A DNA stretch of 64,000 nt, from the sequence record KJ019103.1. One strand, written 5' to 3'. Position numbers and translations under genes: made by a program. The notes under the pieces were generated by a model. It saw only the letters and a list, made by a program, of their open reading frames with translations. It made no database searches and was not told the origin of the DNA. Of the stretch, positions 17,956 through 43,800 are shown piece by piece; the first letter of the stretch is position 1; each line of letters starts with the position of its first letter.

Positions 17956-17995
17956 ATCGTCAGCTCCCCCTGGCACTACTTACCCTTTTTACACA

Positions 17996-19075: not shown

Positions 19076-19096
19076 TCACTCAACCTGTGATATGAT

Positions 19097-19130: not shown

Positions 19131-19145
19131 GTAATGTAAAGTTTT

Positions 19146-19376
19146 ATGTCCCACGATCTAATCGAATTGCTCACTTACTATGTGATCGGTGGTGCCCTTA
19201 TCATAGGACCACCCGCTATCTTTCTCATCATTGCTATGATGGCAGCACTCCAAAATACGAAAGGTCGCATGGTTGGATACAAAGATCACAAAACTTATGG
19301 TGATTCATCTATCTACGATCCGGCACCAAAATTGCCAGTAGATCAAACAAAATTCTTCCTGGAACTTAACAACTGA
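19146..19376 (+). CDS. Small single-TM hypothetical protein between psbA and psbD
   Basis: Hydrophobic N-terminal half; ORF fills the intergenic space. Confidence 0.65.
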   Translation: MSHDLIELLTYYVIGGALIIGPPAIFLIIAMMAALQNTKGRMVGYKDHKTYGDSSIYDPAPKLPVDQTKFFLELNN

Positions 19377-19387
19377 GGTAAACAAAA

Positions 19388-20443
19388 ATGACGACAAGTA
19401 CACTTACAACACCACAAAGGGGGTGGTATGATATTTTGGAGGATTGGCTTCAGAGAGATAGGTTTATCTTTATTGGCTGGTCTGGATTACTACTTCTTCC
19501 CACTGCTTATCTTGCCATTGGCGGCTGGCTTACTGGCACAACTTTTGTCACGAGTTGGTACACCCATGGTCTTGCTTCTTCCTATCTTGAGGGTGCTAAC
19601 TTTCTCACGGCGGCTGTCTCGACTCCTGCTGATGCTATGGGTCATTCTCTTCTTCTACTTTGGGGTCCTGAATCTCAGGGCGACTTCCAGCGGTGGCTCC
19701 AACTTGGAGGGCTTTGGTCCTTTGTTGCTCTCCACGGTGCCTTCGCTTTAATTGGATTCATGCTTCGTCAGTTTGAACTGTCACGACTCATTGGTATCCG
19801 TCCCTACAACGCTATTGCATTCAGTGGTCCTATCGCTGTATTTGTCAGTGTGTTTCTTCTATACCCACTAGGTCAATCTTCCTGGTTCTTTGCCCCCTCC
19901 TTTGGTGTGGCAGCAATCTTTAGATTCCTATTGTTTCTTCAGGGTTTCCACAACTGGACACTGAACCCCTTCCATATGATGGGAGTTGCTGGTATACTAG
20001 GTGGAGCACTACTATCTGCAATCCATGGCGTTACTGTTGAAAATACCCTATATGAAGATGGAGAACAGAATAACACCTTCACTGCGTTCGATTCCACCCA
20101 GGAGGAAGAGACCTATTCGATGGTTACTGCGAACCGCTTCTGGTCGCAAATCTTCGGGGTTGCGTTTAGTAATAAGCGTTGGCTTCACTTCTTTATGTTG
20201 TTTGTTCCTGTCATGGGTCTTTGGGTCTCAAGTATTGGGATCATTGGGCTTGCTCTTAATCTTCGTGCTTATGATTTTGTGAGCCAAGAGATTAGAGCAG
20301 CAGAAGATCCTGAGTTTGAAACTTTCTACACAAAGAACATCCTTCTTAACGAAGGACTAAGAGCATGGATGGCACCTGTGGATCAACCACATGAGTCATT
20401 TGTATTCCCAGAAGAAGTTCTACCTAGAGGTAACGCATTGTGA
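19388..20443 (+). CDS. psbD: Photosystem II D2 protein
   Basis: [25 protein letters not shown] and [12 protein letters not shown]. Confidence 0.99.
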
Positions 20444-27945: not shown

Positions 27946-28320
27946 ATGAATACATATGGTTCTCCCGAAGGTTATCTCTTTAACCTTCATACCTGCTCAG
28001 CATCAGAAGCGAAGCGAATGTGGAAAGAATCTATAAAGAATGATTGGAAACATAAATGTGCTTATTGTGGATCGGAACATGAAATTACTTTAGATCATAT
28101 AGTACCCAAAGCGAAAGGGGGTACTAGTCATACAACCAATGTCGTAGCTTGTTGTCGTTCTTGTAACGGGAGTAAGGCATATGAGGATTGGATTATCTGG
28201 TATATTCAACAGCCATTCTTCACTGAAGAGAGGAGGGAGGCTATTGAAAAGTGGATGGAGAAGGGCCTCCTCAACAATAACTTAGTTGCATATCCACCCA
28301 GAAGAAATGTCGTTTATTGA
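27946..28320 (+). CDS. HNH endonuclease
   Basis: CAYCG...TLDHIVPKAKGG...NVVACCRSCNGSK. Confidence 0.92.
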   Translation: MNTYGSPEGYLFNLHTCSASEAKRMWKESIKNDWKHKCAYCGSEHEITLDHIVPKAKGGTSHTTNVVACCRSCNGSKAYEDWIIWYIQQPFFTEERREAIEKWMEKGLLNNNLVAYPPRRNVVY

Positions 28321-28536: not shown

Positions 28537-31500
28537 ATGATCTCAACAGCGACTAAGATTAAATTTAAAAGGTCTGGTGTAGCCGGACGTAGACCCTCCT
28601 TAGCTGATCTTCAGTTAGGTGAATTGGGGATCAATTATAACGATGGTAAACTATTTTTCCGACAGGAAAATGAAGTAGTTGGCTCTCGTATCATTGAACC
28701 TGGACAGGGTGATGTAATCGGTAAGACTATTTTCGTATCCACAAAGGGTAACGATAACAATAGTGGTCTTAACGAAAGAGATGCCAAGAGAACTGTTAAA
28801 GCGGCCGCCGCAGTAGCAGAACCTGGTGACTCCATCAAACTGTATCCAGGTCAGTACATCGAAGATAACCCTATCGTATTTAAGGATAGGGTATCTGTAG
28901 AGGGTATGGAGCTTCGTAACGTTCTCGTTACTCCAGCCAACCCCAGTAAAGACTTGTATCAAGTTGGTGAGGCGTTCCACGCTACCAACCATTCCTTTGT
29001 GTCCAATAGGGATTCAACAGATGGTGCCTCTATTATCACCTATCGTCCTCTAGAGGGAACTGCGTCTGACAGGTATTTTGACGCGGCTAGACTCATCAGG
29101 GACAATCTTAGCTTCATTGCTAACGAGACAGTAGGTTTCCTAACCAGTGGATATTCAGGCTTTGCCGCTGGTCAGAGATCACAGGACGCTGCTCGTGCTC
29201 TAGAACTAAACAAGAACTTCATAGTAGAAGAAGCATTTCAATATATCAACTCTCCTGATTATACAGGAGCCACATACTTCAACCCAGACCCAGCACAGTG
29301 TAAGAGAGACCTAGGAAATATCATTGATGGTTGGAGATATGATCTCATCTCTGATGGTAACACCAGATCTACTGGTCTTGGTCTAACCTACTACGCACCT
29401 ATTCCCTTTGTGAATAGTGCTAATGTTGCTGACCTTGTATACAACAGAAATAACGGTGATGTTCTAATTGAAACCGACGTAGATACACAGGTTTCAGTTG
29501 GTGAGAAGATCAAACTACAGGATATCAGACTAGAGTGTGGTTCCTACAATAACGACTTCTTTATCACTGGTTTCAAGTATGATAACACCAGTGGTATTGG
29601 AACAGTTAATCTACCCTTTATCCATAACGTCAAGGTTGGAGACCTTGTTAAGTTTGATGGTTTAGAGTTTGATTGTCCTGCCTATGGTGCCATTGAATAT
29701 GGTATCCAAGACTTCAAGTATAATGAAACTACTGGTGGAAGTGTTGTCACACTCACCGAAGATCATGATCTAAAGATTGGTGACACCATTGAACTAAGAG
29801 ACCTTCAGTTCGATTGTCCCGCCTATGGTGGTGACTTCACTAACATCATCAACCTAGAATACAATAAGACCAGTGGTCAGGGTGTTATCACATATGACAA
29901 ACCCGCCGATCTCAAGTCTGGTGACGTTGTTATCCTCTATGACCTCACACTAACTTGTGATGCTTATGGTAACGCTATCTCAGTTACTGATTTCTCTTAT
30001 GATAACTTCACTGGTATCACTGAAGTAGAAGTAAATAGACCCCACAACCTCCGTCCCGGAGACCTAATCAAACTAGAGAACCTTAAGTTCTCTTGTGATT
30101 CCTACCTTAATGAAACATACAAGGTCTCTAACTTTGTATATAATGAGAGCACTGGTGATAGTGTCCTCACCCTAACTGAACCACATAGTTTAGTTGCTGG
30201 TAAGAACGTCAGACTTGCTGACCTAGTTTTCTCCTGTAACTCCTATGTTCCAACCGCTAAAGCAATCTCTGATTTCCAGTATGATGAAGTAGTTGGTATC
30301 TCTACTATTACTCTAGCATCTCCACACAACTTATCAGTTGGTGAGCAGTTCAGACTAGAGGATTTAGTATTCTCCTGTAACTCATATTCCTTCACTGATA
30401 TTCCTATCATTGATGCACCATATGATAATGTAACTGGTTATGTAACCCTATCGTTCTCTGGTGACCACGGACAACAGGTTGGTGAGAGAGTAAGACTCAG
30501 AGATATTGAGTACTCCTGCCCTGGTGGTTCAGGTATCACTACAACCTTGTTCCCCGATGGAACCTTTGGTTATGAGTTTGAAATCCTAAGTGTTCCAAAC
30601 ACTAAGAAGATGATTCTTAATGTTGGCACCTCCACTATTGAACACTCCTATGTGAGTGGTGGTACTGCTACCGTTGGTATTACAACTACTATCTTCCCTG
30701 ATGGAACACAAGGTTTCGACTTCAATGTATCCAGTGTTAATAGTTCCACTGTTATCGAAGCAAGTGTTGGTATTTCTACCATCGCTCACAACTATGTTTC
30801 TGGTGGATCATTATTCGTTGGTTTCACTACCACAGTATTCCCCGATGGAACACAAGGTGATACCTTCAGAGTTAATTCTATTCCTTCTAGCACTCAAATC
30901 AGTGTTAATGTTGGTGTATCTTCTATCGCCCATACTTTCGTATCCGGTGGTACAGCAACTGACCTAGACTCTTTCATCCCTGTATCTGGTTTCACCTACA
31001 ATGAAGGTGACGGAACTGGACTAGTATCCCTAGACAAGGCACACAACCTAGTGGTTGGTGACTCTTTTGTTCTAGAGGATCTTAAGTTCAACTGTAACTC
31101 CTACAGAACAGGTGGTACTTCTACTATTGATATCACTAACTTTGAGTATGATAAGGTAACCGGACTATCTACAGTCACACTATCTTCTTCACACAACCTA
31201 CATGTTAATGATACCGTAGCACTATATGATATCAAGTTCTCTTGTCCTGGTGGTTCAGGTATTACAACTAATATCTTCCCCGATGGAACCAGAGACAACT
31301 TCTATGATGTAGTTGCTGACCTAAACCCCAACCAGATTATTGTTCGTGTTGGTAAGTCTGACATTACTCACACATACGCTAGTGGTGGTAGTCTATCCGT
31401 TGGTATCACTACTAACATCTTCCCTGATGGAACTAGACCTTCTGGTGACTTCTTCCAGGTTATCTCTGTTCCTTCTACCAAGTCTGTTCTAACTCAGGTT

Positions 31501-34500
31501 GGTCTATCCTCTATCGCTCACTCATACGCAAGTGGTGGTAAGTTCTACACTGGTATCACTACTAATGTATTCCCACAGGTATTCACCGACCCCAACATCA
31601 AGGTAACCAACGCTGTATATGACGAAGTATCTGGTGTTATCACCATTACTACTAACAAGGCACACGGACTTACCGCTACCGCACCTGTTCTACTACAGGA
31701 TCTAAACTTCTCTTGCCTCTCTGGTGGTGTAGGAAACACCCCAGGCAACCTTGTGTTCCCCAGGAACCAGGAAGTTTATGATGTTGTGTCCGTTCTATCT
31801 ACTACACAATATACGATCAATGTAGGTCCTTCTGACTTCGCTCACGCATATGTTGATGGTGGTACTTCTACCACACAGAACATCACTAAGGCATCCTACA
31901 ACAAAGGAACTGGTGATCTAACAGTAACCCTAGACAAGCAACACGGTTATTCAGTTGGTGATCGTGCTAGTGTGGTTGATCTCCTCTTCTCCTGTCAGTC
32001 TGGTGGTCCTAACAACCAACCTGGAACACTTCTATTCCCCAGACCTACTGATGAGTATGAAGTTCTATCTGCAAGTGGTAAGACACTCACAGTTAATGTT
32101 GGAGCGTTCCCATCACTAGTTCATACCTATAAGAATGGTGGATCACTAACCTATAGTTCTACTGTACTTCCTGTAAGTAACGCAGTTTATGATCAATCAA
32201 CTGGAGTTCTAACACTTACCACATCAATTGCACTAGGGGCACCTGTTGGTTCTACCATTAAGATGCAGGGTCTAAACTTCTCCTGTGCCTCTGGTGGTCC
32301 TGGTAATGACGCTGGTGCTATTGTATTTCCAAGACTAGACACTCCTACCTTCAAGGTTAAGGAAGTCAAGAGTGGTGTATCCTATGTTATCAATGTAGGA
32401 ACCTCTACACTCTCACACACATATACATCTGGTGGTTTCTCCTCACTCAAGAAGTTGAAGAACGACCCCAATATTTTCAAAGTTATCGACACCCCAACAC
32501 CTAGTAAGGTTATTACTAATGTAGGTGTCTCATCTATCGCTCATGACTATGTGAGTGGTGGTAATATGTTCGTGGGTATCACCACTAATGTATTCCCTGA
32601 TGGAACTCGCCCTGATGGAAGTAGGTTCGAAGTTATCTCCGCCCTATCACCCAACCAGGCACTCATCAACATCGGTGTTTCTACTATCACCCACAACTAC
32701 GATAGTGGTGGTAGGATGCAGTATGGTACTACCAATGAGAGACCTGTTCTAGACTTCCTATACGATGGTCAGACTGGTATCTCCACTGTAACTATTAGAG
32801 GAACTCATGGTTTGAACCAGGGTGACCTAGTGAAACTCAGAGGTCTTGAGTTCGCTTGTACTAACTCACCTGGTATTACAACTACTATCTTCCCAGATGG
32901 AACTGCCGCTGGTCTCAATATCTACAAGGTTACTGAGATTATTAGTAACAGTACCTTCAAGACAAATGTAGGTAGAGTTGGATTCGATCATACTTACATC
33001 CAAGGTGGTTCCGCTTTCGTTGGTATCACTACTAACATCTTCCCAGATGGAACACAAGGTTACAACTATACAGTTGCCGCCATTCCTAATAAGAATCAGG
33101 TAACAGTTGATGTGGGTATCTCCAGTATCCAACATGATTATATTCGTGGTGGATCACTATTCTCTGGTAAGACTAACGAGAGAGATATCGCAGACTTCAA
33201 GTATGATCACATCTCTGGTGATGCGGTTCTTACCTTCAGAAAGGCACAGAACTTATTCACACAAGATCTAGTAAAACTTAAGAACCTTCAGTTTGATTGT
33301 CCAAACTCTACTGGTATCACTACTACTCTCTTCCCAGACGGAACCAGAAGTAACCTCTTCCTAATCAAGGAGAGACTAAACCCAACACAGTTCAAACTCA
33401 ATGTTGGCACTTCACCATTCGGTCATGACTATGTGAGAGGAACAGGTCAGGCATTCGTTGGTATCACTACTAACATCTTCCCTGATACCAAGACACAACC
33501 AAGTAAGTTATTCAAGGTTGTTGATGTCCCAACTCCTACTACTATCTCCGCCAAGATTGGTGTATCCACTATCTCCCACTCATATGTTAAGGGTGGTAAG
33601 GTATTCGTTGGTATTAACACTGATATCTTCCCTGGAGATGAGCAAGTATCACCACTAGGTGACACATATACAGTTCAGAGTATCACTAAAGATGGTGAGT
33701 TGGTTATCAATGTTGGACTATCTTCTATCAGTCACTCCTATGGTGGCGGTGGTAAGGTTCTATATGGACAGAGTTCTGGTAACAACCTACAACATATCAC
33801 TGGTCCTGGTGTCCTAGATGCAACCATCGCCGCTGTGGACTTCGAGAAACAGGTAGCAATCAACGCACTAAACAACAGACCTTGGGGTTCATTCGTTCCT
33901 GAAGAGACTGCTGTTGTGGAGGCGTTCGCCTATGATAACCAGACTGGTTTCGGAACAGTAACTGCTAGAGGAATCAACGTCAACACTGGTGACACCATCA
34001 GAATGAGTGACATTCAGTTTGTTTGTTCTGAGGAATACGCAGGTGTAACCACTACCTTCTTCCCTGATAATACTAGACCAGAGGGTCAGTACTTTAGAGT
34101 AGAAAGAAGAATCAACATCGATGAGTTTGAAGTTAATATTGGTGTTTCTACTATCAAACACGTATTCAACTACGAAACAGGTGGTAACGTATATCGTTAC
34201 AGACAGTCTATTCTAGATGTTAACTACGATAGATCCAGTGGTATCACTAGTATCCGAGCAACCAAGCATGGTTACAAGGCGAAAGATATCGTGGAACTAG
34301 GTGATATCGAGTTCGATTGTCCCGTATTCAAACCTCAATATGATATTGAGAACTTTGTTTATGATAACACAACTGGTCTATCCACAGTTACTACTACTGT
34401 AGATAACACTATCAAGGTAGGTGACAATGTAAAACTAGCAGACATCAAACTAGAGTGTCCTCCATATGGTAACCAGAGAGTTATTGATAACTTTGTTTAT

Positions 34501-37500
34501 GATAACAAGAGTGGTCTTTCCACCATATCACTAACAGCAGCACACGGACTCAACCTAAGACCTAGACCTTCTGTTTCTATCTCTACCGCCCTCTATGATA
34601 ACCAGACTGGTATCCTAACCGTTACCACCAATGCTGACATCAACTTCACCGATAGAAGTGGTCAGGGTGTTCAACTCAGTGGTCTAAGGTTCTCCTGTGA
34701 CTCCGCTGGTTTCCCTGGAACTCTCACCTACCCTGAAGAGAATCTAGTTTATGATATCCTAGAGATTCAGTCTCCTAGTAAGTTTAAGATTAATGTTGGT
34801 CTCTCCACTATCGCTCACGAGTATGTGAATGGTGGTGCCGCTACTAAGGTTGATAGATTCGATGTGAAACTACAGGGTATCAAGTTTGATTGTCCCGCCT
34901 ATGGAAACACAATCGATGTTACTAACTTCCTATACGATCAGAGAAGTGGTAACTCACTAGTTACCGTAGATAAGGCACACAAACTATCTGTTGGTGATAA
35001 CATCAAACTAGCGGATCTCAAGTTCCAATGTGCTCCATATGGTAACGATTACAATGTTCTAAACGCAGATTACGACAACACAACTGGTATTATTACAGTA
35101 ACCACTAACCAAAACATCAACGGTGTTGGTGTTGGTGATACTATTCGCCTCTCCAGACTACAGTTTGATTGTGTAGGTAGTGGTCCTGAGTATAATATCA
35201 CTAACGTATTCTTCAATACTGGTAACAGATCAGTTATTCTCACAGTTCCTGAAAGACCAATTGGTCTAAACCCAGGTGATGACATTAAACTAACCAATAT
35301 GTCATACCTAGAAGGTGGTAGTGGTAATGTAGTTGCGTATCCAGACGGAAGAGATTCGAGTCTAAACATCTTCCGTATCAATGATGTTCAACCTAACTCC
35401 ATTCTCCCTGGATACTTCGATGTAACCACAGCGTTCCCCAATGTTAAGGATCCTTTCGCGATCTTCAACAATACTGGTAGACTAACCACTGGTATTACTA
35501 CTAACATCTACCCTGAGAATGTAGGTGCTGAAGGTGGTTTCTATGAAGTTATCCGCCTAAGACAAGATAACCAGTTTGAGATTCAGGTAGGAACCTCTAC
35601 TATCACTCACAACTATGTGAGACAAGGACAGATGTTCACTGGTGTAACCACCAACTTCTTCCCTGGTAACCTACAGAACTCACCTAGAGGAAACATCTTT
35701 GAGATTGTGGAAGTTCCCACAGCAACACAGGTGAGAATCAATGTAGGTGTATCTTCTATCTCTCATAGTTATGATAGTGGTGGTCAGATGTTTGTTGGTA
35801 TTACTACTAACATCTTCCCTGATGGAACCAGAGGTAACCTATTCCCAGTTGTTGGAGTGGCAAATACTCTCACCCTAAGAATCGACGCTGGTGTATCCAG
35901 TATTCCTCACAACTATGTTTCTGGTGGAGAACTATTCGTAGGTATTACAACTAATATCTTCCCTGGTAACTCACAGAACTCACCAAGAGGTAGTATCTTC
36001 AAGGTTCTATCTAAGGATAACGAGTGTGGTGCTGATAGATTCACTATCAATGTTGGTGTATCTTCCATCACTCACGGTTATGTTGAGGGTGGAACAGTCA
36101 CCACTGGTGTTACAACTAACAAGTTCCCTGATGGAACACACGGATTCAAGTTCCCTGTTATCGATGTTCTAGATGACAACTACTTCACCGTGAATGTTGG
36201 TACTTCTACTATCACTCACAACTATATCTCTGGTGGTTTCACTAGAAGACTTGAAGTTCCTATCAATAGTTTCGTATATGATAGAGTTTCTGGTCTATCC
36301 ACAGTGGGTATCCAAAGTCACAGAATGAATATCGGTGACCTTGTGAAACTTCGTGATGTGAAGTTCAACTGTGATCCATATGGTGGAGAAAAGACTATCT
36401 CTGGTGTTGTTTATGATAATACCTCTGGTAGAATGACCGTTAACACCACTGGTTCTCATAGTCTAAACATCAATGATGTTGTGAAACTCTCCAATATTCA
36501 GTTGGATTGTTCCCCATATGGTAACGAGAGAACTATTACCGCCGCCACCTACAACAGAAACAATGGAAACCTAAGTGTTCAGGTATCTGAACCTCACAAC
36601 CTCAAGATTAGTGAGAATGTGAAACTTAAAGGTTTAGAGTTCTCCTGTTCCTCAGAACACGCAGGTGTGACAACAACAATCTTCCCAGATTCAACCGCAC
36701 CTTCTCTAAACATCTACGCCATCCAGAGTATCACCAACTCCACAACCTTCATGGTTAATGTTGGAACCTCTACTATCAGTCACAACTATGTTTCTGGTGG
36801 TTCCGCTTTCGTAGGTATCACAACTAACATCTTCCCAGGTGATAGCCAGAACTCCCCCAGAGGTTCTTTCCTCAGTGTGGTAGATATCCCAGCATCAGAC
36901 GCCTTCGTGGTGAATGTAGGGGTTTCTACTATCTCTCACGGGTATGTTAGAGGTGGATTGGTTCAGACAGGTATTACAACTGATGTATTCCCTGATGGAA
37001 CACAGAGTGATTTCTTCAAGATTGAAGATGTCCCTAGTAATAATACAGTTGTAATCAACGCAGGTATCTCTTCTATCATCCATAGATACAACTCTGGTGG
37101 TTTCGCCGCCAAGTATGTTACCTATCAGTCCAATAACTCACAACTACTTGATAGTTCTGTTATTAGAGTGAGTGGTGATTGTATGGCAGTTGGTGAGAGA
37201 GTTGAAGAACTCGCAGGTATTGTTACCTCCATCATCAAGAATGGTCCTTCAATCGCACCTGGTGGTATTCCAGTAGATGTGGTAAGTGCATCCTACGACC
37301 AGTCTGGTGGAGCACTATCAGTCACAGTCAAAGACGCAATTGACCTCACACCAACTAACATAGTTAGAATCGAAGGTCTTATCTTCGAGTGTGAGTCCTC
37401 TGGTGTAACAAACACTCGTGTATATCCTGACAATAAGGTATTCAACTATGAGGTTCTATCAGTTCAGTCTCCAACAACCTTCACTATCAATGTAGGTTCT

Positions 37501-40440
37501 CAGGCAGATATCCCACACACATATGTGAATGGTGGAACTGTAAGACCAGGTAACAAGTTTGATGTGGCAACCGCAACCTACAATACTGAAAATGGTATTG
37601 TTAGAGTTACTACCACTGAAGATAACTACTTGGTTCTTGGTAGAGGAGTTAACCTACAGGGTCTAAACTTCTCCTGTACCTCTGGTGGTCCTAACAACAA
37701 ACCTGGAACACTAACCTTCCCCGACAAAACACCAACCAATGTAACCGCCGCCACATATGATAGTGTGACTGGTGTATTACGTATCACAACCAACAGACCT
37801 CACCAAGCATACAAGGACGCGTTTGTATCCCTAAACGGACTAACCTTCACTTGTGATCCAGGTGGTCCTCTAGTATTCCCTAGAAACCCTGATACTAAGT
37901 CCTTCAGAGTTACTAAGAGAGTTGATGACTACACATATGAGTGTCAGTTGGCACCGACCAATAAGGTTCATACGTATCTAAGTGGTGGTACTTCCTCCAC
38001 AGGAAACGGAAACTTCAGAGTTTCCCGTCTCATTGATACAAAGACCTTCGAAGTCACAATGGTTCCACTAGATCTACCACATACCTATGTGAATGGTGGT
38101 TCCGCCGCTAGTGTATTCACTAGACAGATCATTGATGGAATCAACATCAACACTAGGAAGTGTGCTAGAGACGTTAGACGTATCTACCTCGCAGTGGCAC
38201 ACGATATCACTCGTGGTGGTAACTGGAAGTGTGTTGAAGGAGCGAAACTCTACTACGATAACGTGGGTCAAACCAAGTTTATCTCTGGTGGTGAAGTAAA
38301 TCAAACCGTTGAGGCACTTGACTTCTCCCTAAACATTGTTAGATGTTTAATCAACAACGTAACATGGGGTGGAGTTCCAAGAGGTTATCTCACTAAGGGT
38401 GAGAGAAGTGAACTAAGAATTCCATCTTCAGCTAAGACTTCAGTGGTTGGTTTCAGACAACAACTACTTTCCAACCAATACACTACTCAGAAGAAGAGTA
38501 TTTCTGGTATGGTATACGATAACCTTACGGGTATCGCAACCGTCACCACTAAACTCTCACATGAACTCATCAAGTATGATGGTATTCAACTCTCAGATAT
38601 TGAGATGAGATGTACTGGTAGTCCAAGGATTACCACCAATGTATTCCCTGATGGGACACAAGGTGAGATCTTTGAAGTTATGGAAACTCTAGATGATAGA
38701 GTAGCATACATCGTAACTGACGCGTCATACACCAACACCACTGGTAAGTTGGTAGTAACAACAACAGGAAACAATGATATTCCTGTTGGATCAAGAGCAA
38801 AACTAGATGGTTTACTCTGGACTTGTTCATACGATCCTTCAAAACAACTTAAGTTCCCAGAGAACAGGAAGTTCCGTTATGAGGTTATCGCAAAACCAGA
38901 TGGTACAACACTAGAGTTCAATGTTGGTATCTCTACGATTCCACACACATTTGTTCCAGCTCCTATAGATGTTGAATACACAGTCAAGGAGGATCCAGTT
39001 AAGTTTAAGGTTCATGTTGGTACAGTTTCCTTCCCACACACCTACTTCGGTGGTGGAACAGTATGGCACAAACTACCATTCACTCCACCTTTCACCCAAA
39101 CACAGATCAAAGACGTATCACAACAGAAGGATCCAGTCCAATTCTCCAATAATACTCCTAACGGATGTGCTAATGTATTCTCCGCTATCAGTAATTGTAT
39201 TGGTGTTGTTACTAGTATCGTAGCAGATGGATTAGAAGGATCAGGTATCTCCACAACTTATCCAGGTAACAATGGTAAGGGAGTTCCAACGATGGCAGAG
39301 ATGCCTTCACAGGGTGTTGGTAACATTATCAAGGGTCCATACATCAGAAACTGTACTAACTTCGTTCCCAAGTCTATTGGTATGAGAATGGATGGTTTCG
39401 ACGCAGAACCTGGTGATGAAATCTCCAATGGTGTTCAAGGTTCATCTAACGTTGACTCCTTCACCCAGTTCAACCCTGGTGGTGTTGGTTGTTCCATCTC
39501 TAACGGAACCTACCAACAGTTGGTTTCTATCTTCACTATCTGTTGTGATGAAGCAATCGTATGTGACTCTGGAGCACAACTCGACCTCACTAACTCCAAC
39601 TCTTCCTTCGGTAGATTGGGTCTAGTCGCAAGAGGTATTGGTGATAAACTCTCCAAGTGTATCGACAGATATACTGGTATCGTCGCCAAAGAGGCATCAA
39701 TCGAAGATGACCTAGTTGTTGTGAAGGGTATTGGTGATAAGAGACCCTACGATGGTCAGGGTATTTTCTTCGGAGAACTCTTCAGGGATGTGGTTAGTAT
39801 CGAAGTTCTGGACGGTGGTTCAGGTTACAACGATGATATTCCACCTAACGCGTTTGTCGCAGAACCTACTGGTCCCGCTGGTATTAAGGCGGAAGTTTCA
39901 CCAACAGTCAGAGATGGTGTTGTTGTTTCTATCGAGGTTATCGCAAATGGTAACCAATACAGAGAGAAATTCCCTGAGGTTGTAATATCACCTCCTAAGA
40001 GTCCTCTTGGTAGAACCGCAAAAGCAAGGGCAATTACCGAACCTCTCTACTATAATGTAGAAAGTTCTTCCCCACCTGAAGAGGGTACAACTAGTATCAT
40101 TTTCAAACAGCGTCTAAATAATACCGTATCGGTAGGCACAACTGTATTCTTCTCTAGATTAAGTCTACAGATTGCCTCCTCTCACTCCTTCGAATACATT
40201 GGTGCTGGTAACAGCATTAACGGAGCAAGACCTTCTGAAGGTGGAGTTCCAATTAAGGAAAATGAGATCGTGAAGGAAGACGGTGGTTCAATTGTCTATA
40301 CCTCCACTGACCAGGCAGGTAACTTTAACATTGGTGACGATTTCGTTATCAACCAGTTCACTGGTACTATCACTGGTAGATCGTTCGATCAATCAGTCCT
40401 AAATAAAGTTACTCCACTCATCATCGCCCTAGACAGTTAA
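28537..40440 (+). CDS. Giant virion structural/fibre protein (3967 aa) with a split beta-helix and about 31 nested repeat domains
   Basis: Late promoter at 28475. N-terminal fibre-attachment motif KIKFKRS...LQLGELGINYNDGKLF, DUF1565-like FVSTKGNDNNSG, and C-terminal SSHSFEYIGAG...VYTSTDQAGNF block typical of cyanophage structural proteins. Confidence 0.85.
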   Translation: MISTATKIKFKRSGVAGRRPSLADLQLGELGINYNDGKLFFRQENEVVGSRIIEPGQGDVIGKTIFVSTKGNDNNSGLNERDAKRTVKAAAAVAEPGDSIKLYPGQYIEDNPIVFKDRVSVEGMELRNVLVTPANPSKDLYQVGEAFHATNHSFVSNRDSTDGASIITYRPLEGTASDRYFDAARLIRDNLSFIANETVGFLTSGYSGFAAGQRSQDAARALELNKNFIVEEAFQYINSPDYTGATYFNPDPAQCKRDLGNIIDGWRYDLISDGNTRSTGLGLTYYAPIPFVNSANVADLVYNRNNGDVLIETDVDTQVSVGEKIKLQDIRLECGSYNNDFFITGFKYDNTSGIGTVNLPFIHNVKVGDLVKFDGLEFDCPAYGAIEYGIQDFKYNETTGGSVVTLTEDHDLKIGDTIELRDLQFDCPAYGGDFTNIINLEYNKTSGQGVITYDKPADLKSGDVVILYDLTLTCDAYGNAISVTDFSYDNFTGITEVEVNRPHNLRPGDLIKLENLKFSCDSYLNETYKVSNFVYNESTGDSVLTLTEPHSLVAGKNVRLADLVFSCNSYVPTAKAISDFQYDEVVGISTITLASPHNLSVGEQFRLEDLVFSCNSYSFTDIPIIDAPYDNVTGYVTLSFSGDHGQQVGERVRLRDIEYSCPGGSGITTTLFPDGTFGYEFEILSVPNTKKMILNVGTSTIEHSYVSGGTATVGITTTIFPDGTQGFDFNVSSVNSSTVIEASVGISTIAHNYVSGGSLFVGFTTTVFPDGTQGDTFRVNSIPSSTQISVNVGVSSIAHTFVSGGTATDLDSFIPVSGFTYNEGDGTGLVSLDKAHNLVVGDSFVLEDLKFNCNSYRTGGTSTIDITNFEYDKVTGLSTVTLSSSHNLHVNDTVALYDIKFSCPGGSGITTNIFPDGTRDNFYDVVADLNPNQIIVRVGKSDITHTYASGGSLSVGITTNIFPDGTRPSGDFFQVISVPSTKSVLTQVGLSSIAHSYASGGKFYTGITTNVFPQVFTDPNIKVTNAVYDEVSGVITITTNKAHGLTATAPVLLQDLNFSCLSGGVGNTPGNLVFPRNQEVYDVVSVLSTTQYTINVGPSDFAHAYVDGGTSTTQNITKASYNKGTGDLTVTLDKQHGYSVGDRASVVDLLFSCQSGGPNNQPGTLLFPRPTDEYEVLSASGKTLTVNVGAFPSLVHTYKNGGSLTYSSTVLPVSNAVYDQSTGVLTLTTSIALGAPVGSTIKMQGLNFSCASGGPGNDAGAIVFPRLDTPTFKVKEVKSGVSYVINVGTSTLSHTYTSGGFSSLKKLKNDPNIFKVIDTPTPSKVITNVGVSSIAHDYVSGGNMFVGITTNVFPDGTRPDGSRFEVISALSPNQALINIGVSTITHNYDSGGRMQYGTTNERPVLDFLYDGQTGISTVTIRGTHGLNQGDLVKLRGLEFACTNSPGITTTIFPDGTAAGLNIYKVTEIISNSTFKTNVGRVGFDHTYIQGGSAFVGITTNIFPDGTQGYNYTVAAIPNKNQVTVDVGISSIQHDYIRGGSLFSGKTNERDIADFKYDHISGDAVLTFRKAQNLFTQDLVKLKNLQFDCPNSTGITTTLFPDGTRSNLFLIKERLNPTQFKLNVGTSPFGHDYVRGTGQAFVGITTNIFPDTKTQPSKLFKVVDVPTPTTISAKIGVSTISHSYVKGGKVFVGINTDIFPGDEQVSPLGDTYTVQSITKDGELVINVGLSSISHSYGGGGKVLYGQSSGNNLQHITGPGVLDATIAAVDFEKQVAINALNNRPWGSFVPEETAVVEAFAYDNQTGFGTVTARGINVNTGDTIRMSDIQFVCSEEYAGVTTTFFPDNTRPEGQYFRVERRINIDEFEVNIGVSTIKHVFNYETGGNVYRYRQSILDVNYDRSSGITSIRATKHGYKAKDIVELGDIEFDCPVFKPQYDIENFVYDNTTGLSTVTTTVDNTIKVGDNVKLADIKLECPPYGNQRVIDNFVYDNKSGLSTISLTAAHGLNLRPRPSVSISTALYDNQTGILTVTTNADINFTDRSGQGVQLSGLRFSCDSAGFPGTLTYPEENLVYDILEIQSPSKFKINVGLSTIAHEYVNGGAATKVDRFDVKLQGIKFDCPAYGNTIDVTNFLYDQRSGNSLVTVDKAHKLSVGDNIKLADLKFQCAPYGNDYNVLNADYDNTTGIITVTTNQNINGVGVGDTIRLSRLQFDCVGSGPEYNITNVFFNTGNRSVILTVPERPIGLNPGDDIKLTNMSYLEGGSGNVVAYPDGRDSSLNIFRINDVQPNSILPGYFDVTTAFPNVKDPFAIFNNTGRLTTGITTNIYPENVGAEGGFYEVIRLRQDNQFEIQVGTSTITHNYVRQGQMFTGVTTNFFPGNLQNSPRGNIFEIVEVPTATQVRINVGVSSISHSYDSGGQMFVGITTNIFPDGTRGNLFPVVGVANTLTLRIDAGVSSIPHNYVSGGELFVGITTNIFPGNSQNSPRGSIFKVLSKDNECGADRFTINVGVSSITHGYVEGGTVTTGVTTNKFPDGTHGFKFPVIDVLDDNYFTVNVGTSTITHNYISGGFTRRLEVPINSFVYDRVSGLSTVGIQSHRMNIGDLVKLRDVKFNCDPYGGEKTISGVVYDNTSGRMTVNTTGSHSLNINDVVKLSNIQLDCSPYGNERTITAATYNRNNGNLSVQVSEPHNLKISENVKLKGLEFSCSSEHAGVTTTIFPDSTAPSLNIYAIQSITNSTTFMVNVGTSTISHNYVSGGSAFVGITTNIFPGDSQNSPRGSFLSVVDIPASDAFVVNVGVSTISHGYVRGGLVQTGITTDVFPDGTQSDFFKIEDVPSNNTVVINAGISSIIHRYNSGGFAAKYVTYQSNNSQLLDSSVIRVSGDCMAVGERVEELAGIVTSIIKNGPSIAPGGIPVDVVSASYDQSGGALSVTVKDAIDLTPTNIVRIEGLIFECESSGVTNTRVYPDNKVFNYEVLSVQSPTTFTINVGSQADIPHTYVNGGTVRPGNKFDVATATYNTENGIVRVTTTEDNYLVLGRGVNLQGLNFSCTSGGPNNKPGTLTFPDKTPTNVTAATYDSVTGVLRITTNRPHQAYKDAFVSLNGLTFTCDPGGPLVFPRNPDTKSFRVTKRVDDYTYECQLAPTNKVHTYLSGGTSSTGNGNFRVSRLIDTKTFEVTMVPLDLPHTYVNGGSAASVFTRQIIDGININTRKCARDVRRIYLAVAHDITRGGNWKCVEGAKLYYDNVGQTKFISGGEVNQTVEALDFSLNIVRCLINNVTWGGVPRGYLTKGERSELRIPSSAKTSVVGFRQQLLSNQYTTQKKSISGMVYDNLTGIATVTTKLSHELIKYDGIQLSDIEMRCTGSPRITTNVFPDGTQGEIFEVMETLDDRVAYIVTDASYTNTTGKLVVTTTGNNDIPVGSRAKLDGLLWTCSYDPSKQLKFPENRKFRYEVIAKPDGTTLEFNVGISTIPHTFVPAPIDVEYTVKEDPVKFKVHVGTVSFPHTYFGGGTVWHKLPFTPPFTQTQIKDVSQQKDPVQFSNNTPNGCANVFSAISNCIGVVTSIVADGLEGSGISTTYPGNNGKGVPTMAEMPSQGVGNIIKGPYIRNCTNFVPKSIGMRMDGFDAEPGDEISNGVQGSSNVDSFTQFNPGGVGCSISNGTYQQLVSIFTICCDEAIVCDSGAQLDLTNSNSSFGRLGLVARGIGDKLSKCIDRYTGIVAKEASIEDDLVVVKGIGDKRPYDGQGIFFGELFRDVVSIEVLDGGSGYNDDIPPNAFVAEPTGPAGIKAEVSPTVRDGVVVSIEVIANGNQYREKFPEVVISPPKSPLGRTAKARAITEPLYYNVESSSPPEEGTTSIIFKQRLNNTVSVGTTVFFSRLSLQIASSHSFEYIGAGNSINGARPSEGGVPIKENEIVKEDGGSIVYTSTDQAGNFNIGDDFVINQFTGTITGRSFDQSVLNKVTPLIIALDS

Positions 40441-40444: not shown

Positions 40445-40795
40445 ATGGCAGCAGTTGCTTTAAATACGTTCAAAACGGTCAGGCATTTAGTTTCTGATTC
40501 CAATGTGGGGATTTATACATCCCCCATTGGTGTTGCCTCTATTGTCCTATACGCTCAGGCGACACACGTTGCGAACGATGAAAGTGTATATTTCATTAAC
40601 TTTTCACATGCTCGTCCCGACGAGGATCCTGTGCAGTTTGAAATCATTAAGGATGGTCCAGTTATCCCTAATGACGCACTAAACCTATTAACAGGTAGAT
40701 TAGTTCTCGAAACTGGAGACGAACTTAGAGTATCAGGAAATACGACCGGAGATGTGAAGGTTGTTGTTTCTATTCTAGAGACTGCAAAGTCTTAA
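40445..40795 (+). CDS. Small structural partner protein of the giant gene
   Basis: LNTFKT...IYTSP...SIVLYAQ...GRLVLETGD...SILET pattern typical of cyanophage virion accessory proteins. Confidence 0.7.
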   Translation: MAAVALNTFKTVRHLVSDSNVGIYTSPIGVASIVLYAQATHVANDESVYFINFSHARPDEDPVQFEIIKDGPVIPNDALNLLTGRLVLETGDELRVSGNTTGDVKVVVSILETAKS

Positions 40796-40827: not shown

Positions 40828-43800
40828 ATGCCTCTAAATTATCTTACCGGAAGAGTAAGTAGATTACAAGTTGGATTTCCAGGGTTTTCAACAGCAAAGG
40901 ACCTTACAGTTGATGTAGCAGGTGCCATTGGTATTGATACCCAAAACCCAAGAGCAGCTGCCGACTTCCCAGATGTCAGTATCCGTGGTGATATTGTTGA
41001 CTCTGTTGGATTTACCGGTGGTATTGGGTATTTTCTAGCGCAAGATGTTCAGGGTGTTCGGTGGGTAGAGGCTCCACCTATCAACTCTAACGCCATCTTA
41101 GTGTTAGACAATGGAGTTATCGTTGGTGCTGGATCATTCATTGGTCTAAACTTTGACTCTGGTAAGGATGAGGACTTCCTCTCGGTTGTTCCTGACCCAC
41201 TAAACCCACAGATTGCAAAGATTGCATATGATGTTCGTTGGGTAAGATATAATTACGGTAATAATAAAGGTATCTCCACAGGTTTTGGAGATAATGGTGA
41301 CTACTCCTCTATCCCTGGTTATGGAACCACAGAGGCAGTTGGTGTTACCTCAGTTGGTATTGGTACTAACCAACCACTAGATGACTTCCAAGTTGGTATT
41401 GGATCTACTGGTGTTACTATCAACGGACCTCTAGGTCTAGTTGATGCAGAAATTATTAAAGCAAAATCAATCTCGGTTGAAGGAAACCTAGAGGTTGAAT
41501 CACTTATTGTTAGACCTGGTGTTGCCACTCTAACCACTCTAGATGTATTGAACGAGGCGTTCATACCAGTAGAGTATGTTGGTTTCTCCAGCATTCAAGA
41601 TGCAAATATTGATGCTCTCTTTGCTAATCAGTTACTAGCAGGTATTACTACCCTAGGTTTCGGTGGTGAAGATGTATTCATCCTCAACGACTTATATGTT
41701 CAGGGTGGTTTAGGTACCTTCGATGGCGACGTATTCGTTGGTGGAGACCTAACTGTTAAGGGTGAGACGTTCTTCAACCAGATTAACGCAGTCAACTTAT
41801 CAGTATCTGGTATTGCCACTATCGTCCAAGCGGAGATAGCTGTTGGTTTAGTTACCGATCTAAAAGTATCTGGTTTCTCTACACTATCAGATTTCTCATT
41901 CAACATTGGTGTTGGTACATACCTAGAACTAGAAGATCTAGATGTATCTGGTGTTGGTAGTTTTGGTGTTGTCAACTCTGGTGATATTAATGTTAGTGGT
42001 GGTTTAACCGCTAGTGAGATTGATGCAGATAAGGGATACATTGGTATTCTCACAGCAGACTCTATTGTATCTGGTGCAGGTACTATTGGTTCTATCGAGT
42101 CTGATGGGAACCTAACAACACTTAATGATATTATTGTTGGTGGTGCTTCAACCTTCGTTGGTTTGGGTACTTTCCAAGACGATCTCTTTGTTGGTGGTGA
42201 CCTCTTTGTTAGAGGTGATGTTACCTTTAAGAATATTAATGGTGAACAACTACTAATCAGTGGTATTGGTACCATCAAGGAACTAGTCTTTGATAGTGGT
42301 ATTGGAACCTCACTAGAAGTGAGAGATCAGATTACGACTGGTATATCTACGATCAATGAAGCAGATATTCAAGATGCCGCTGTTGAGAGACTCACTGTTG
42401 GTGATGCAGAGATCATCGGTATCGCAACTATTACCGAGATTGATGTAGATAGGGGTAGAGTTGGTATCCTAACTGGTACAGACCTCTCCTATGCTGGTAT
42501 CGGTACTATCACGGAGATTGATGTTGACCAGGGTAGAGTTGGTCTAGTCACTGGTGACACACTACTATACTACGAACAGTCTAGGATCAATAGAGTTACC
42601 TTCTTTGATAACTACCTATCAGTTAATCAGAGTCTAAGAGTTTCTGGTCTCTCCACCTTTGTTGGAACAGGTACATTCTTTAATGACTTGTATGTTGGTG
42701 GTGACCTATATGTTGCTGGTGAACTAAACTTCAAACAACTCAATGGTGAGAACCTATACCTAACTGGTGTTGGTACCATCTATGATTTACGTAACACTGT
42801 TGGTTTCATTACTAACCTCTACGTAGAAGAGTCTGTAACTGGTTTAGCAACCATCAGTAGTCTAGTTGGTTCTTCCGCTACCATCACAGACTTCACTGGA
42901 CAGTCACTACTCATCCAGAATCCATTCAACCCAATGCCTTTGGATCCAACTGGGATCCCAGGACAGGGTGTTATTGATAGTCTCCTAGTTAGAAACCTAA
43001 CTTCTTCTAACAACATTCTAGCCAATGACATTGATGCCAACTTCGTTGACACCGATGATCTAAAGGCTGGTGTTGGTACTATCACTGACCTAGAGTGGAC
43101 TACCGCTGTTGGTGATGACACTACTACCAATACTCTACAGGTTACTGATACAGCAACCATCAATATCATCGATGCCAATCAGATCGATGCCGAAGATGCC
43201 AACATTGGAGTTGCCACCCTCTCTAGTCTCCTAGTAACTGGTGTCACTACCTTCAAGGGTCAGGTTGATATTGAGGATATTGAGTTCGTTGACCAGAGTG
43301 TCACCGGTATTTCCTCCATCAACATTCTCAAGTTTAATGTTGGTTATGGAACTTACCTAGAGGTCACTGACTCAGTAACTGGTGTTGGAACTATTGGTCT
43401 TGCCAGTATCACAACCGCTCAGGTATCCTTCCTAGATGTAAGAGATGAGGTAGTTGGAGCATCCACTATTGGTGTTCTATCAGTAACTGAAGGATTTGCA
43501 GTATCTGGTTTCTCCACCTTTGTTGGTTTCACTACCTATAAAGGAGATGTATTTGTTGATGGTAACTTAACTGTTACTGGTTTCGTTAGTTTCACACAAC
43601 TAAACGCCGATCAATCACAGATTGGTATCCTAACTGTATTCGATGCGTTAGACGCTAGAACGGGTGTTGGTACATTCAAACACCTAGAGACAGTAGATAG
43701 TGCAGTTCTATCAGGTGTATCTACCATTGGACTCACAACCTTCAAGAATGGTGATGTTAATATCAACCGCAACTTAACAGTTGGTGGTATCACTACCTTC

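What the first reader, a model, noticed from the sequence alone, without database searches (positions are those of the whole stretch)
29419..39066. Matryoshka protein: about 31 copies of one domain inserted recursively into each other (balanced brackets, depth 8)
Seen in sequence: the repeat unit has two halves. Half A is roughly I.xF.YD..TG...VT....H.L..GD.V.L.xL.F.C and half B is roughly GITT.IFPDGT....F.V.......vNVG.S.I.H.Y..GG. Intact AB units exist (e.g. 31597-31870), but most halves are separated and the order parses like nested parentheses. Block 1 (29419-33770) reads AAAAAAAA BBB AA BB B[AB AB AB] B A B B A B B B, giving 12 A and 12 B, never negative and closing to zero. Block 2 is AB. 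Block 3 (34200-36249) is AA A[AB] AAA BBBBBB. Block 4 (36250-37113) is AAABBB. Blocks 5 and 6 contain AB units inserted inside B halves. Every block balances by my manual count. Inference: a new domain copy repeatedly inserted into the loop after the conserved Cys of an existing copy, so the chain runs out through the A halves and back through the B halves, forming telescopic, branched stalks rather than beads on a string. The unit resembles E1-FCCH-like beta domains (from memory). I know of no described virion protein with this tree-like topology; it could be a branched capsid/tail appendage or a glycan-binding array.
Basis: partly seen in the sequence, partly recalled or inferred. Interest (0 to 1): 0.92.

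Follow-up and report, generated by a model that had tools for sequence, protein, structure and literature searches.

The report
Self-nested domain stalks in cyanophage protein
A 3,967-residue tail-fibre-like protein of a marine cyanophage is built from about 31 copies of one small beta domain inserted inside each other up to eight deep, a rare way to build a protein that was already known from cyanobacterial RNA polymerase but is larger and branched here.

Summary
The finding lies inside one intact ORF (28537-40440, 3,967 aa) of Synechococcus phage ACG-2014f. Profiles trained on the protein itself find 31 A-half and 32 B-half hits. These parse as 30 bracket-matched pairs plus one degenerate unit. 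The parse closes to zero in seven blocks and reaches depth 8. One A half and three B halves are split by inserted AB units.

A contiguous AB unit folds as one 8-strand beta domain (AF2 pLDDT 92, pTM 0.81). Bracket-matched halves 95-1,436 residues apart covary at specific columns (A35-B5 0.35). This signal is absent under shifted (-0.01) or first-in-first-out (0.00) pairing. Diverged orthologues differ by whole matched A+B sets. Syntenic orthologues in S-T4 and S-SKS1 are 836-928 aa "tail fibre" proteins with only 1-2 AB units.

So the nested topology is well supported. I had no model coordinates, so direct contacts were not seen. The AAABBB model is only moderate (pLDDT 76). The FCCH likeness is sub-threshold. 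The function is inferred: stiff, branched virion appendages.

Recursive self-insertion is already described for the cyanobacterial RNA polymerase Si3 region (six levels). I therefore rate this a new variant of a known kind. One near-identical relative carries a large in-frame deletion that leaves unmatched A halves.

The parts
28537..40440 (+). Whole gene: 3,967-aa tail-fibre-like giant protein (annotated 'hypothetical protein' in KJ019103.1)
   Evidence: Single ORF without stops. 100% identical to ACG-2014f. PHROG 3442 over the full length, plus tail-fibre PHROGs 17885 and 5342.
28537..29424 (+). N-terminal non-repeat region (aa 1-296), with a sub-threshold beta-helix-like start (aa 70-126)
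   Evidence: Aligns collinearly with the N-termini of the small S-T4 and S-SKS1 orthologues. DUF1565 scores 17.4 bits against a cut-off of 20.3.
29425..33753 (+). Block 1 (aa 297-1739): 15 AB domains, depth 8. Order: A8 B3 A2 B2 B[ABABAB] B A BB A BBB
   Evidence: HMM map. The stack parse closes to zero here.
31552..32562 (+). B half split into an N part (31552-31596) and a C part (32464-32562) by three contiguous AB units (31603-32436)
   Evidence: Complementary profile coordinates 1-14 and 12-44.
33754..33915 (+). Depth-0 linker (aa 1740-1793), paralogous to the other depth-0 linkers
   Evidence: S-T4 residues 250-383 align to giant 1750-1889, and also to the regions before blocks 5 and 6.
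33916..34185 (+). Block 2 (aa 1794-1883): one contiguous AB domain
34210..36237 (+). Block 3 (aa 1892-2567): 7 domains, depth 6. One A half (34483-34554 and 34864-34893) is split by an AB unit (34579-34836). A degenerate AB unit lies at 35197-35490.
36262..37101 (+). Block 4 (aa 2576-2855): AAABBB, three domains nested
   Evidence: AF2 model of aa 2570-2860: pLDDT 76.3, pTM 0.58. It superposes on an independent BFVD model of a paralogous nest at TM 0.62.
37102..37284 (+). Depth-0 linker (aa 2856-2916)
37285..38100 (+). Block 5 (aa 2917-3188): AB, then A B[AB]. The inserted AB lies at 37741-37989 and the C part of the split B at 38005-38100.
   Evidence: The weak N part of the split B is found at iE 0.38.
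38101..38499 (+). Depth-0 linker (aa 3189-3321), homologous to the pre-AB region of the small orthologues
38500..39057 (+). Block 6 (aa 3322-3507): A B[AB]. The B half (38629-38700 and 38977-39057) is split by an AB unit (38713-38955).
   Evidence: Complementary profile coordinates 2-25 and 16-44.
39058..40440 (+). C-terminal non-repeat domain (aa 3508-3967 plus stop), shared with many cyanophage 'tail fibre' proteins
   Evidence: tblastn finds 162 phage records, including S-SKS1 tail fibre protein (56%), S-T4 (52%) and P-SSM2 tail fibre-like protein. No Pfam or PDB sequence hit.
31126..31395 (+). Reference contiguous AB unit (aa 864-953) used for the single-domain model
   Evidence: AF2 pLDDT 91.7, pTM 0.81, eight strands.
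40445..40795 (+). 116-aa ORF immediately downstream. It sits in the same position in S-CAM7, S-T4 and S-SKS1. It may be a partner or assembly factor (inference).
   Evidence: PHROG 1276. Synteny.

Best explanation
The ORF 28537-40440 encodes a tail-fibre-like structural protein of the T4-like cyanophage ACG-2014f. It is an expanded version of an 830-930-aa protein that sits at the same genome position in S-T4 and S-SKS1.

The expansion consists of about 31 copies of one roughly 90-residue all-beta domain. The N-terminal half (A, 38 aa, four strands) ends in a Cys conserved in about 100% of copies. The C-terminal half (B, 44 aa, four strands) starts G-x-T-T...F-P and ends H-x-Y-x-x-G-G.

Most copies are interrupted by other copies. 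The interruption usually lies at the hairpin between the last A strand and the first B strand. Three insertions lie inside B and one inside A. The chain therefore runs outward through a series of A halves and back through the matching B halves. Each level re-forms one domain from pieces up to about 1,400 residues apart.

This gives seven closed blocks. The largest has 15 domains, is 8 deep and carries side branches. The blocks are strung between an N-terminal and a C-terminal non-repeat domain.

Shown here: the A/B map, the balance, the single-domain fold of AB, the last-in-first-out pairing by covariation, and matched-set changes between orthologues.

Inferred: neighbouring domains are joined by two chain crossings instead of one, so each block should be a stiff rod or antler. 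These would project small beta-barrel binding modules from the baseplate or tail to increase reach and avidity for host surface structures.
For: - Gene and context.
- A/B map and complementary split hits.
- Balanced stack parse, 30 pairs, depth 8. The 31st, degenerate unit.
- AB is one domain: AF2 pLDDT 91.7, pTM 0.81.
- A and B are not homologous to each other, so they are two different halves: hhalign probability 5.7%.
- Mantel tests favour bracket pairing: r = 0.433 against 0.261 for first-in-first-out pairing, with 0 of 5,000 permutations reaching it. Non-contiguous pairs alone give r = 0.495, p = 1e-4.
- Covariation was measured on 331 non-contiguous pairs from 57 proteins. The top-10 MI-APC is 0.183, against 0.098 (shifted one level), 0.102 (first-in-first-out) and 0.067 (random).
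- The covariation map correlates with the map from contiguous units at r = 0.24, against 0.04, 0.02 and 0.10.
- Column pair A35-B5 scores 0.350 against -0.009, 0.004 and 0.021. Pairs linking A strand 2 to B strand 7, and A strand 4 to B strands 5 and 8, behave the same way.
- AAABBB model: pLDDT 76.3, pTM 0.58, with half cores at 80-94. It superposes on an independent model of a paralogous nest at TM 0.62.
- S-CAM7 has two extra AB units, each placed right after the Cys of an A half.
- Metagenomic orthologues differ by 3 or 4 inserted AB units, AABB or AAABBB, and a depth-5 or depth-8 block 1. All of these remain balanced.
- Across 67 distinct architectures nA and nB correlate at r = 0.99. Unmatched tokens are 4.5%, against 20.1% after shuffling.
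- Small syntenic orthologues carry 1-2 AB units and collinear termini.
Against: - No model coordinates were available, so A(i)-B(j) contacts were never seen directly.
- The AAABBB model is only moderately confident. The B-start segments that should zip onto the A halves fall below pLDDT 50.
- Covariation cannot separate intra-chain from inter-chain pairing.
- The near-identical relative ACG-2014f_Syn7803US26 carries one large in-frame internal deletion. It leaves 8 A halves with only 3 closings. Either balance is not essential in culture, or the protein is dispensable, or that assembly is wrong.
- In a wider, more diverged sample (145 representatives, many of them fragments) only 26 parse perfectly. 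There 21.8% of tokens are unmatched, against 37.6% after shuffling, with an excess of A. Weak detection of diverged B halves is a likely cause but is not proven.
- Presence in virions, oligomeric state and ligand are all untested.
Confidence: 0.75

Rival explanations
1. A and B are two separate small domains that fold on their own. The protein would then be ordinary beads on a string with alternating tandem arrays of A and of B, and the equal counts and bracket order would be coincidence or a by-product of block duplication.
For: - Long uninterrupted A runs and B runs exist.
- A and B are not homologous to each other.
- The wider family shows many strings with a surplus of A.
- US26 is unbalanced.
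Against: - A contiguous AB unit is predicted as one compact domain with pTM 0.81.
- 38 and 44 residues are very small for independent four-strand domains.
- Counts match in every block and across 67 architectures (r = 0.99).
- Split halves have complementary coordinates.
- Strand-level covariation between A and B columns appears only under bracket pairing.
Confidence: 0.05
2. The register is the same (outer A with outer B), but the halves pair between chains. In a dimer or trimer the A run of one chain would zip onto the B run of another, giving a domain-swapped fibre rather than a self-closed hairpin stalk.
For: - Phage fibres are usually trimers (established knowledge).
- Covariation and balance cannot tell intra-chain from inter-chain pairing.
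- AF2 leaves the zipping strands at low confidence in a monomer model.
Against: - The innermost A and B are joined by only 4-6 residues and are predicted to form a monomeric domain. The hairpin turn therefore forces the next level to be adjacent in the same chain.
- The monomer AAABBB model still reaches pTM 0.58.
Confidence: 0.12
3. The topology is real, but the expansion is largely neutral repeat growth in a dispensable accessory protein. It would be tolerated rather than selected, with no special mechanical or binding role.
For: - The copy number of inserted units varies among orthologues.
- Orthologues with only 1-2 units serve other cyanophages.
- US26 appears to carry a large internal deletion.
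- A preprint reports that deletions are frequent in evolved S-CAM7 lines, in strain-specific regions (bioRxiv 10.64898/2026.10.08.757702).
Against: - The overall architecture, including depth 8, split halves and block order, is kept between ACG-2014f and S-CAM7-like proteins at only 50-60% identity.
- Key columns are 94-100% conserved over more than 1,000 distinct halves.
- More than 40 isolates keep the intact 11.9-kb ORF.
Confidence: 0.08

Closest known systems
Si3 insertion of cyanobacterial RNA polymerase beta' (RpoC2): recursively nested hybrid-motif (SBHM) domains
   Same: One small beta domain type is inserted into copies of itself. This gives A1-B1-C-B2-A2 patterns with branching. Six levels and 8-10 domains are reported (PMC13114784). 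The chain runs out and back in the same way.
   Different: - The domain family differs. The profile search of PDB sequences found no hit, and no cyanobacterial RNAP appears among the top 50 Foldseek hits.
- The protein class differs: a phage tail-fibre-like protein rather than an enzyme loop.
- The scale is larger: 31-35 copies, seven blocks, depth 8 here and 10-11 in relatives by automatic parse.
Small syntenic orthologues: S-T4 gp074 (836 aa, 'putative major tail protein') and S-SKS1 SWZG_00012 (928 aa, 'tail fiber protein')
   Same: - Same genome position: S-SKS1 has the same HNH gene upstream, and in both phages a roughly 115-aa ORF and then a giant protein follow (annotated baseplate wedge in S-SKS1).
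- Collinear N- and C-terminal domains at 33-54% and 41-46% identity.
- Same AB domain.
   Different: They hold only 1 (S-T4) or 2 (S-SKS1) contiguous AB units and no nesting.
E1 FCCH-type beta-barrels, including FCCH-like decoration domains on siphovirus tail-tube proteins (PMC13576161)
   Same: A small all-beta barrel used as an exposed add-on or insertion domain. Likeness is weak: Pfam E1_FCCH E = 0.047, UBA6 TM 0.50-0.53. Two homologues carry a precomputed PF16190 flag.
   Different: The Pfam score is far below the cut-off. The model has eight strands, against six described for FCCH. Foldseek matches P22 coat I-domain, the F1-ATPase N-terminal barrel and phi92 endosialidase equally weakly.
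Nested heterologous domains in T4 sheath gp18, flagellin and hook proteins, and GroEL (from my own knowledge, not tested here)
   Same: Each domain is an insertion in the previous one, so both chain ends lie at the base and the tip domain is contiguous.
   Different: Those nests use different domains at each level and are only 3-4 deep. Here one domain family is reused recursively.

Membership tests
E1_FCCH (Pfam PF16190) | Score at or above the Pfam gathering threshold (29.5 bits) | tested here: not met
   The whole protein has no Pfam hit. Block 4 scores 14.2 bits, E = 0.047. A single AB unit has no hit.
E1_FCCH (Pfam PF16190) | Six-stranded closed antiparallel barrel with Greek-key topology (as described in PMC13576161) | tested here: inconclusive
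   The AF2 unit has eight strands. Foldseek matches UBA6 at TM 0.50-0.53, E 0.18-0.28, no better than unrelated barrels.
Recursive self-insertion architecture (RNA polymerase beta' Si3 type) | A domain hosts a copy of its own family, repeated over three or more levels | tested here: met
   Stack parse reaches depth 8. Pairing is supported by covariation. Split halves are complementary.
Recursive self-insertion architecture (RNA polymerase beta' Si3 type) | The repeated unit is a sandwich-barrel hybrid motif homologous to Si3 domains | tested here: not met
   A profile of 13 AB units finds no RNA polymerase among PDB sequences at E up to 10. Only one weak T. thermophilus transcription initiation complex chain (9ujl_D) appears in Foldseek, at TM 0.31.
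T4-like cyanophage tail-fibre or baseplate-associated structural protein | Sits in the baseplate/tail-fibre gene cluster and is homologous to proteins annotated as tail fibre | tested here: met
   Neighbours match baseplate-wedge PHROGs. The C-terminal domain matches tail-fibre proteins in 162 phage records. Small orthologues are syntenic. These are annotations, not experiments.
T4-like cyanophage tail-fibre or baseplate-associated structural protein | Protein is present in the virion | not tested
   I found no proteomic data for ACG-2014f or S-CAM7.
Right-handed beta-helix start (DUF1565, PF07602) | Pfam score at or above 20.3 bits | tested here: inconclusive
   17.4 bits, E = 0.003, at aa 70-126.
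Ordinary tandem-domain (beads-on-a-string) fibre or adhesin | Each repeat unit is contiguous in the sequence | tested here: not met
   Only 13 of about 31 units are contiguous. The others are split by 95 to about 1,360 residues.

The most novel reading that the evidence does not exclude
This family may be the deepest and most branched natural case of a domain recursively inserted into itself: 31-35 copies, depth 8 here and 10 or more in relatives. It may represent a general, so far undescribed way for phages to build stiff, doubly connected, antler-like virion appendages from a single chain. Copy number and branching could then be tuned by adding or removing matched half-pairs. The appendages might serve first contact with host surface filaments or glycans. 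S-CAM7, which carries the 4,168-aa orthologue, is reported to bind type IV pili more often than two other cyanophages (bioRxiv 10.1101/2025.09.20.677514), but no link to this protein has been shown.
Probability: 0.35. Interest if true: 0.8.

Novelty: new variant of a known kind. Interest (0 to 1): 0.62.

Why it matters
Domain insertion is common, but reuse of one domain as both host and guest over many levels is rare. The one described case found here (RNA polymerase Si3) has 8-10 domains.

This protein family has at least 620 representative clusters at 50% identity in public data. It spans a series of architectures from 1 unit to 35 units. That makes it a good system for three questions:
- How do such nests grow, given that each step must keep A and B balanced?
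- How does a chain fold when the two halves of a domain are made more than 1,000 residues apart?
- What mechanical benefit does double connection give?

For phage biology, it assigns a structure-based reading to the largest gene of a whole group of marine cyanophages, which is currently annotated 'hypothetical protein'. It also shows that standard domain and repeat annotation would misread such proteins as two unrelated repeat types.

Tried and rejected
- Discontinuous hub idea. I first thought the depth-0 linkers plus the two termini might form one discontinuous hub with the stalks inserted in its loops. Alignment to the small S-T4 orthologue shows instead that the linkers are paralogues of one pre-AB segment. 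At depth 0 the protein is therefore a tandem of [linker + stalk] modules between two terminal domains. I dropped the hub idea.\n- A and B as duplicates of one half-barrel. hhalign finds no relation between them.\n- Sequence searches. The AB profile and the N- and C-terminal domains gave nothing useful against PDB sequences. Pfam gave only sub-threshold hits.\n- Foldseek against PDB gave only weak barrel matches.\n- Other large ORFs in the window hold no real A/B units.\n- Literature searches for nested insertion in phage fibres, giant cyanophage proteins and 'matryoshka' proteins found no description of this protein. The supplement of the S-CAM7 evolution preprint was not held.\n- The wider representative set was too fragmentary and too diverged for my window-trained B profile to give a clean balance test.\n- Two calls failed on size limits and one on a file path (17).\n- Consensus lines printed by the alignment and HMMER tools themselves were not used.\n- Possible slip. 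The outputs, and notebook entries 2 and 3 (entry 3 only refers back to it), show the alignment bounds and the junction of the internal deletion in the US26 relative. This report gives only its kind and count.
Full report
**What is there.**
The window is 100% identical to Synechococcus phage ACG-2014f (KJ019103.1), a T4-like cyanomyovirus. More than 40 isolates carry the same 11.9-kb stretch at 99% identity or more. The finding lies inside one ORF, 28537-40440 on the + strand, 3,967 codons with no stop. GenBank calls it a hypothetical protein.

Pfam finds nothing in it. PHROGs gives its own family (3442) over the full length and two 'tail fiber' families, 17885 and 5342. An HNH endonuclease gene lies upstream (27946-28320). 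A 116-aa ORF (40445-40795) and two giant baseplate-wedge-like genes (40828-46434, 46506-52715) lie downstream.

**Checking the observation.**
I seeded two profiles from this protein's own residues (aa 866-903 for A, aa 908-951 for B) and iterated them on the protein alone. They converge on 31 A hits and 32 B hits. Full-length hits have E-values of 1e-10 to 1e-22.
- Block 1: A8 B3 A2 B2 B[AB AB AB] B A BB A BBB
- Block 2: AB
- Block 3: A A A[AB] A A ... B5
- Block 4: AAABBB
- Blocks 5 and 6: AB, A B[AB], A B[AB]

The square brackets are real. The flanking partial hits cover complementary profile columns (B 1-14 with 12-44, A 1-24 with 29-38, B 2-25 with 16-44).

A stack parse gives 30 matched pairs, nothing left over, depth 8. 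A broader profile also finds the degenerate 31st unit at aa 2221-2318, and a weak N part of the fourth split half.

Linkers are stereotyped: A>A 8-9 aa, B>B 4 aa. Apart from one 106-aa gap that holds the degenerate unit, the long non-repeat gaps (54, 61, 133 aa) all fall where the bracket count is zero. By my arithmetic, a random order of 30 A and 30 B is balanced with probability 1/31. Three gaps falling on the 6 zero positions out of 59 has probability about 6e-4.

**Is AB one domain?**
I aligned the 13 naturally contiguous AB units of the window and modelled one of them. AlphaFold2 gives an eight-strand all-beta domain, pLDDT 91.7 and pTM 0.81. The lowest confidence is at the A|B junction. 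A and B are not detectably related to each other (hhalign probability 5.7%).

Over 1,375 distinct A halves and 1,064 distinct B halves from homologues, a few columns are almost fixed:
- A: Tyr6 98%, Gly11 98%, Cys38 100%
- B: Gly1 100%, Pro8 100%, His38 98%, Tyr40 94%, Gly43 and Gly44 100%

**Do distant halves pair as the brackets say?**
I could not see model coordinates, so I used three indirect tests.

1. Similarity matrices. The A-half similarity matrix and the B-half similarity matrix agree best under bracket pairing. Mantel r = 0.433, and none of 5,000 permutations reaches it, whether global or within blocks. First-in-first-out pairing gives 0.261. With the 13 non-contiguous pairs alone, r = 0.495 and p = 1e-4.

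2. Column covariation. I used 120 homologues from the protein database and collected 331 non-contiguous bracket pairs from 57 proteins. The two halves lie 95-1,436 residues apart, median 208.
   - The top-10 mutual information (APC-corrected) is 0.183 under bracket pairing. It is 0.098 when shifted by one level, 0.102 for first-in-first-out and 0.067 for random pairing.
   - The map correlates with the map from contiguous units at r = 0.24, against 0.04, 0.02 and 0.10.
   - Single column pairs are sharp. A35-B5 scores 0.350 against -0.009, 0.004 and 0.021. A17-B27, A35-B42, A29-B29, A30-B14/15 and A14/16-B26 behave alike.
   - Mapped on the model's strands, these pairs link A strand 4 with B strands 5 and 8, and A strand 2 with B strand 7. 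The two halves therefore share sheets, and the usual insertion point is the tip of the strand 4/strand 5 hairpin.

3. The AAABBB model. I modelled block 4 with an alignment of 28 orthologous segments. It gives pLDDT 76.3 and pTM 0.58. The cores of all six halves score 80-94, but the B-start segments fall below 50. The model superposes on an independent BFVD model of a paralogous nest at TM 0.62 over 299 columns. This is consistent with a defined three-domain rod, but it is not proof.

**Relatives.**
- S-CAM7 (4,168 aa, about 55-60% identical) keeps the whole plan and has two extra AB units. Each sits directly after the Cys of an A half.
- Metagenomic orthologues vary by matched sets and stay balanced. 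They have three or four AB units in the split B, AABB or AAABBB in block 5, and a depth-5 block 1 with 7 pairs instead of a depth-8 block with 15.
- Over 67 distinct architectures, nA and nB correlate at r = 0.99. Unmatched tokens are 4.5%, against 20.1% after shuffling.
- Other giant proteins (4,400-5,700 aa, flagged PF14240) carry clean runs such as A6B6, and nests 10-11 deep by automatic parse.
- A profile search of 1.84 billion representatives finds 620 clusters with the domain. In that wider, partly fragmentary set my profiles leave 21.8% of tokens unmatched, against 37.6% after shuffling, with a surplus of A. The most unbalanced proteins show partial B hits and long unexplained gaps. This points to poor detection of diverged B halves, but I could not prove it.
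- One isolate (ACG-2014f_Syn7803US26) is more than 99% identical and has a 1,365-aa gene with one large in-frame internal deletion. The product has 8 A halves and only 3 closings.
- Another isolate (Syn7803C16) has the gene annotated as two overlapping CDS, which is one break.

**Origin.**
The C-terminal 460 residues match 'tail fibre' proteins in 162 phage records. At the same genome position, S-T4 has an 836-aa protein with one AB unit, and S-SKS1 has a 928-aa 'tail fiber protein' with two. Both the N- and the C-terminal domains of the giant align collinearly with them. The depth-0 linkers of the giant are paralogues of the segment that precedes AB in those proteins. The giant is therefore a small tail-fibre-like protein expanded by duplication of [linker + AB] modules and by repeated insertion of AB units into AB units.

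**How it most likely works.**
Shown: the chain passes out through A halves and back through B halves, and each level is one domain.

Inferred:
- Every pair of neighbouring domains is joined by two short crossings (8-9 aa and 4 aa), so each block should be a stiff rod.
- Insertions at the other three sites create side branches.
- Both ends of every block return to the base.
- Given the synteny and the tail-fibre-like termini, I take the protein to be a baseplate- or tail-attached appendage that projects many small barrels.
- A role in first contact with host surface structures is plausible but untested.

**Comparison with what is known.**
The closest precedent for the topology is the Si3 region of cyanobacterial RNA polymerase beta'. 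Hybrid-motif domains are nested there in a six-level recursive insertion with 8-10 domains (PMC13114784). The principle is the same. The domain is different and apparently unrelated, the protein class is different, and the scale is smaller.

- Pfam gives 14.2 bits against a cut-off of 29.5.
- Foldseek matches UBA6 at TM 0.50-0.53. P22 coat I-domain, the F1-ATPase N-terminal barrel and phi92 endosialidase match equally weakly.
- Two homologues carry a precomputed PF16190 flag.

FCCH-like barrels are known as decorations of siphovirus tail tubes (PMC13576161). In BFVD the AB model matches cyanophage fibre and baseplate proteins at TM 0.85-0.92. Nested heterologous domains in T4 sheath protein, flagellin and GroEL are analogies from my own knowledge.

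**Novelty and verdict.**
I found no description of this protein or of this topology in a virion protein. Because recursive self-insertion is already described, I rate the finding as a new variant of a known kind. It has the largest copy number and depth I could find. Interest is 0.62.

- No coordinates, no virion data, and the oligomeric state is unknown.
- The outputs, and notebook entries 2 and 3 (entry 3 only refers back to it), show the bounds and junction of the US26 deletion. I stopped, deleted nothing, and give only kind and count here.
- Consensus lines printed by the tools themselves were not used.

Noticed in passing
L004 9218-13315 (ACG-2014f_Syn7803US26, NC_047714.1): The orthologous gene is only 1,365 aa. 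It is more than 99% identical to the two ends of the window protein and has one large in-frame internal deletion. This leaves 8 A halves with 3 closings, which is unbalanced. It may be a real deletion in a viable isolate or an assembly error.
   Followed up: partly
L003 9254-21252 (ACG-2014f isolate Syn7803C16, KJ019146.1): The orthologous gene is annotated as two overlapping CDS, which is one break. Taken together, the two parts carry the same A/B order as the window.
   Followed up: partly
window 28537-40440, every AB unit: Each domain has exactly one strictly conserved Cys (last column of A, about 100% of 1,375 halves) and one His near the end of B (98%). This is unusual for an extracellular marine protein. 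It could be a metal site, a covalent link, or just core packing.
   Followed up: no
window 40445-40795: A 116-aa ORF directly follows the giant gene. It holds the same position in S-CAM7 (MT586120), US26, S-T4 and S-SKS1. It matches PHROG 1276, whose profile also matches parts of the giant. It may be a partner or assembly factor.
   Followed up: partly
window 27946-28320: An HNH endonuclease gene sits directly upstream of the giant gene, and likewise in S-CAM7, US26, C16 and S-SKS1. This is a conserved neighbour of a highly repetitive gene.
   Followed up: no
P0033, P0034 and other 4,400-5,700-aa proteins: A second class of giant proteins (precomputed PF14240) carries the same A/B halves, with single nests 10-11 deep and clean runs such as A6B6. 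The nesting habit is therefore not confined to this gene.
   Followed up: partly
P0137, P0146, P0150 and many others: Many smaller family members end their A/B string with a lone trailing A (for example ABABABA). Either a diverged B-like partner follows, or A can pair with something else.
   Followed up: no
window aa 207-296, 1750-1793, 2895-2916, 3202-3321 of the giant: The non-repeat linkers before the blocks are paralogues of one another and of the pre-AB segment of S-T4. Two of them (aa 254-287 and 3208-3241) share a C-x-R-D ... Y-Y motif.
   Followed up: partly
window 16001-20000: GC content rises to 0.45-0.46 and GC skew turns negative around the psbA gene (17996-19075) and a neighbouring 351-aa ORF, which I did not identify. 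This is consistent with host-derived photosystem genes.
   Followed up: no
S-CAM7 literature (bioRxiv 10.1101/2025.09.20.677514; 10.64898/2026.10.08.757702): S-CAM7, which carries the 4,168-aa orthologue, is reported to attach to type IV pili more often than S-PM2 or S-RSM4. It is also reported to accumulate many deletions in strain-specific regions during experimental evolution. No link to this gene is shown.
   Followed up: partly
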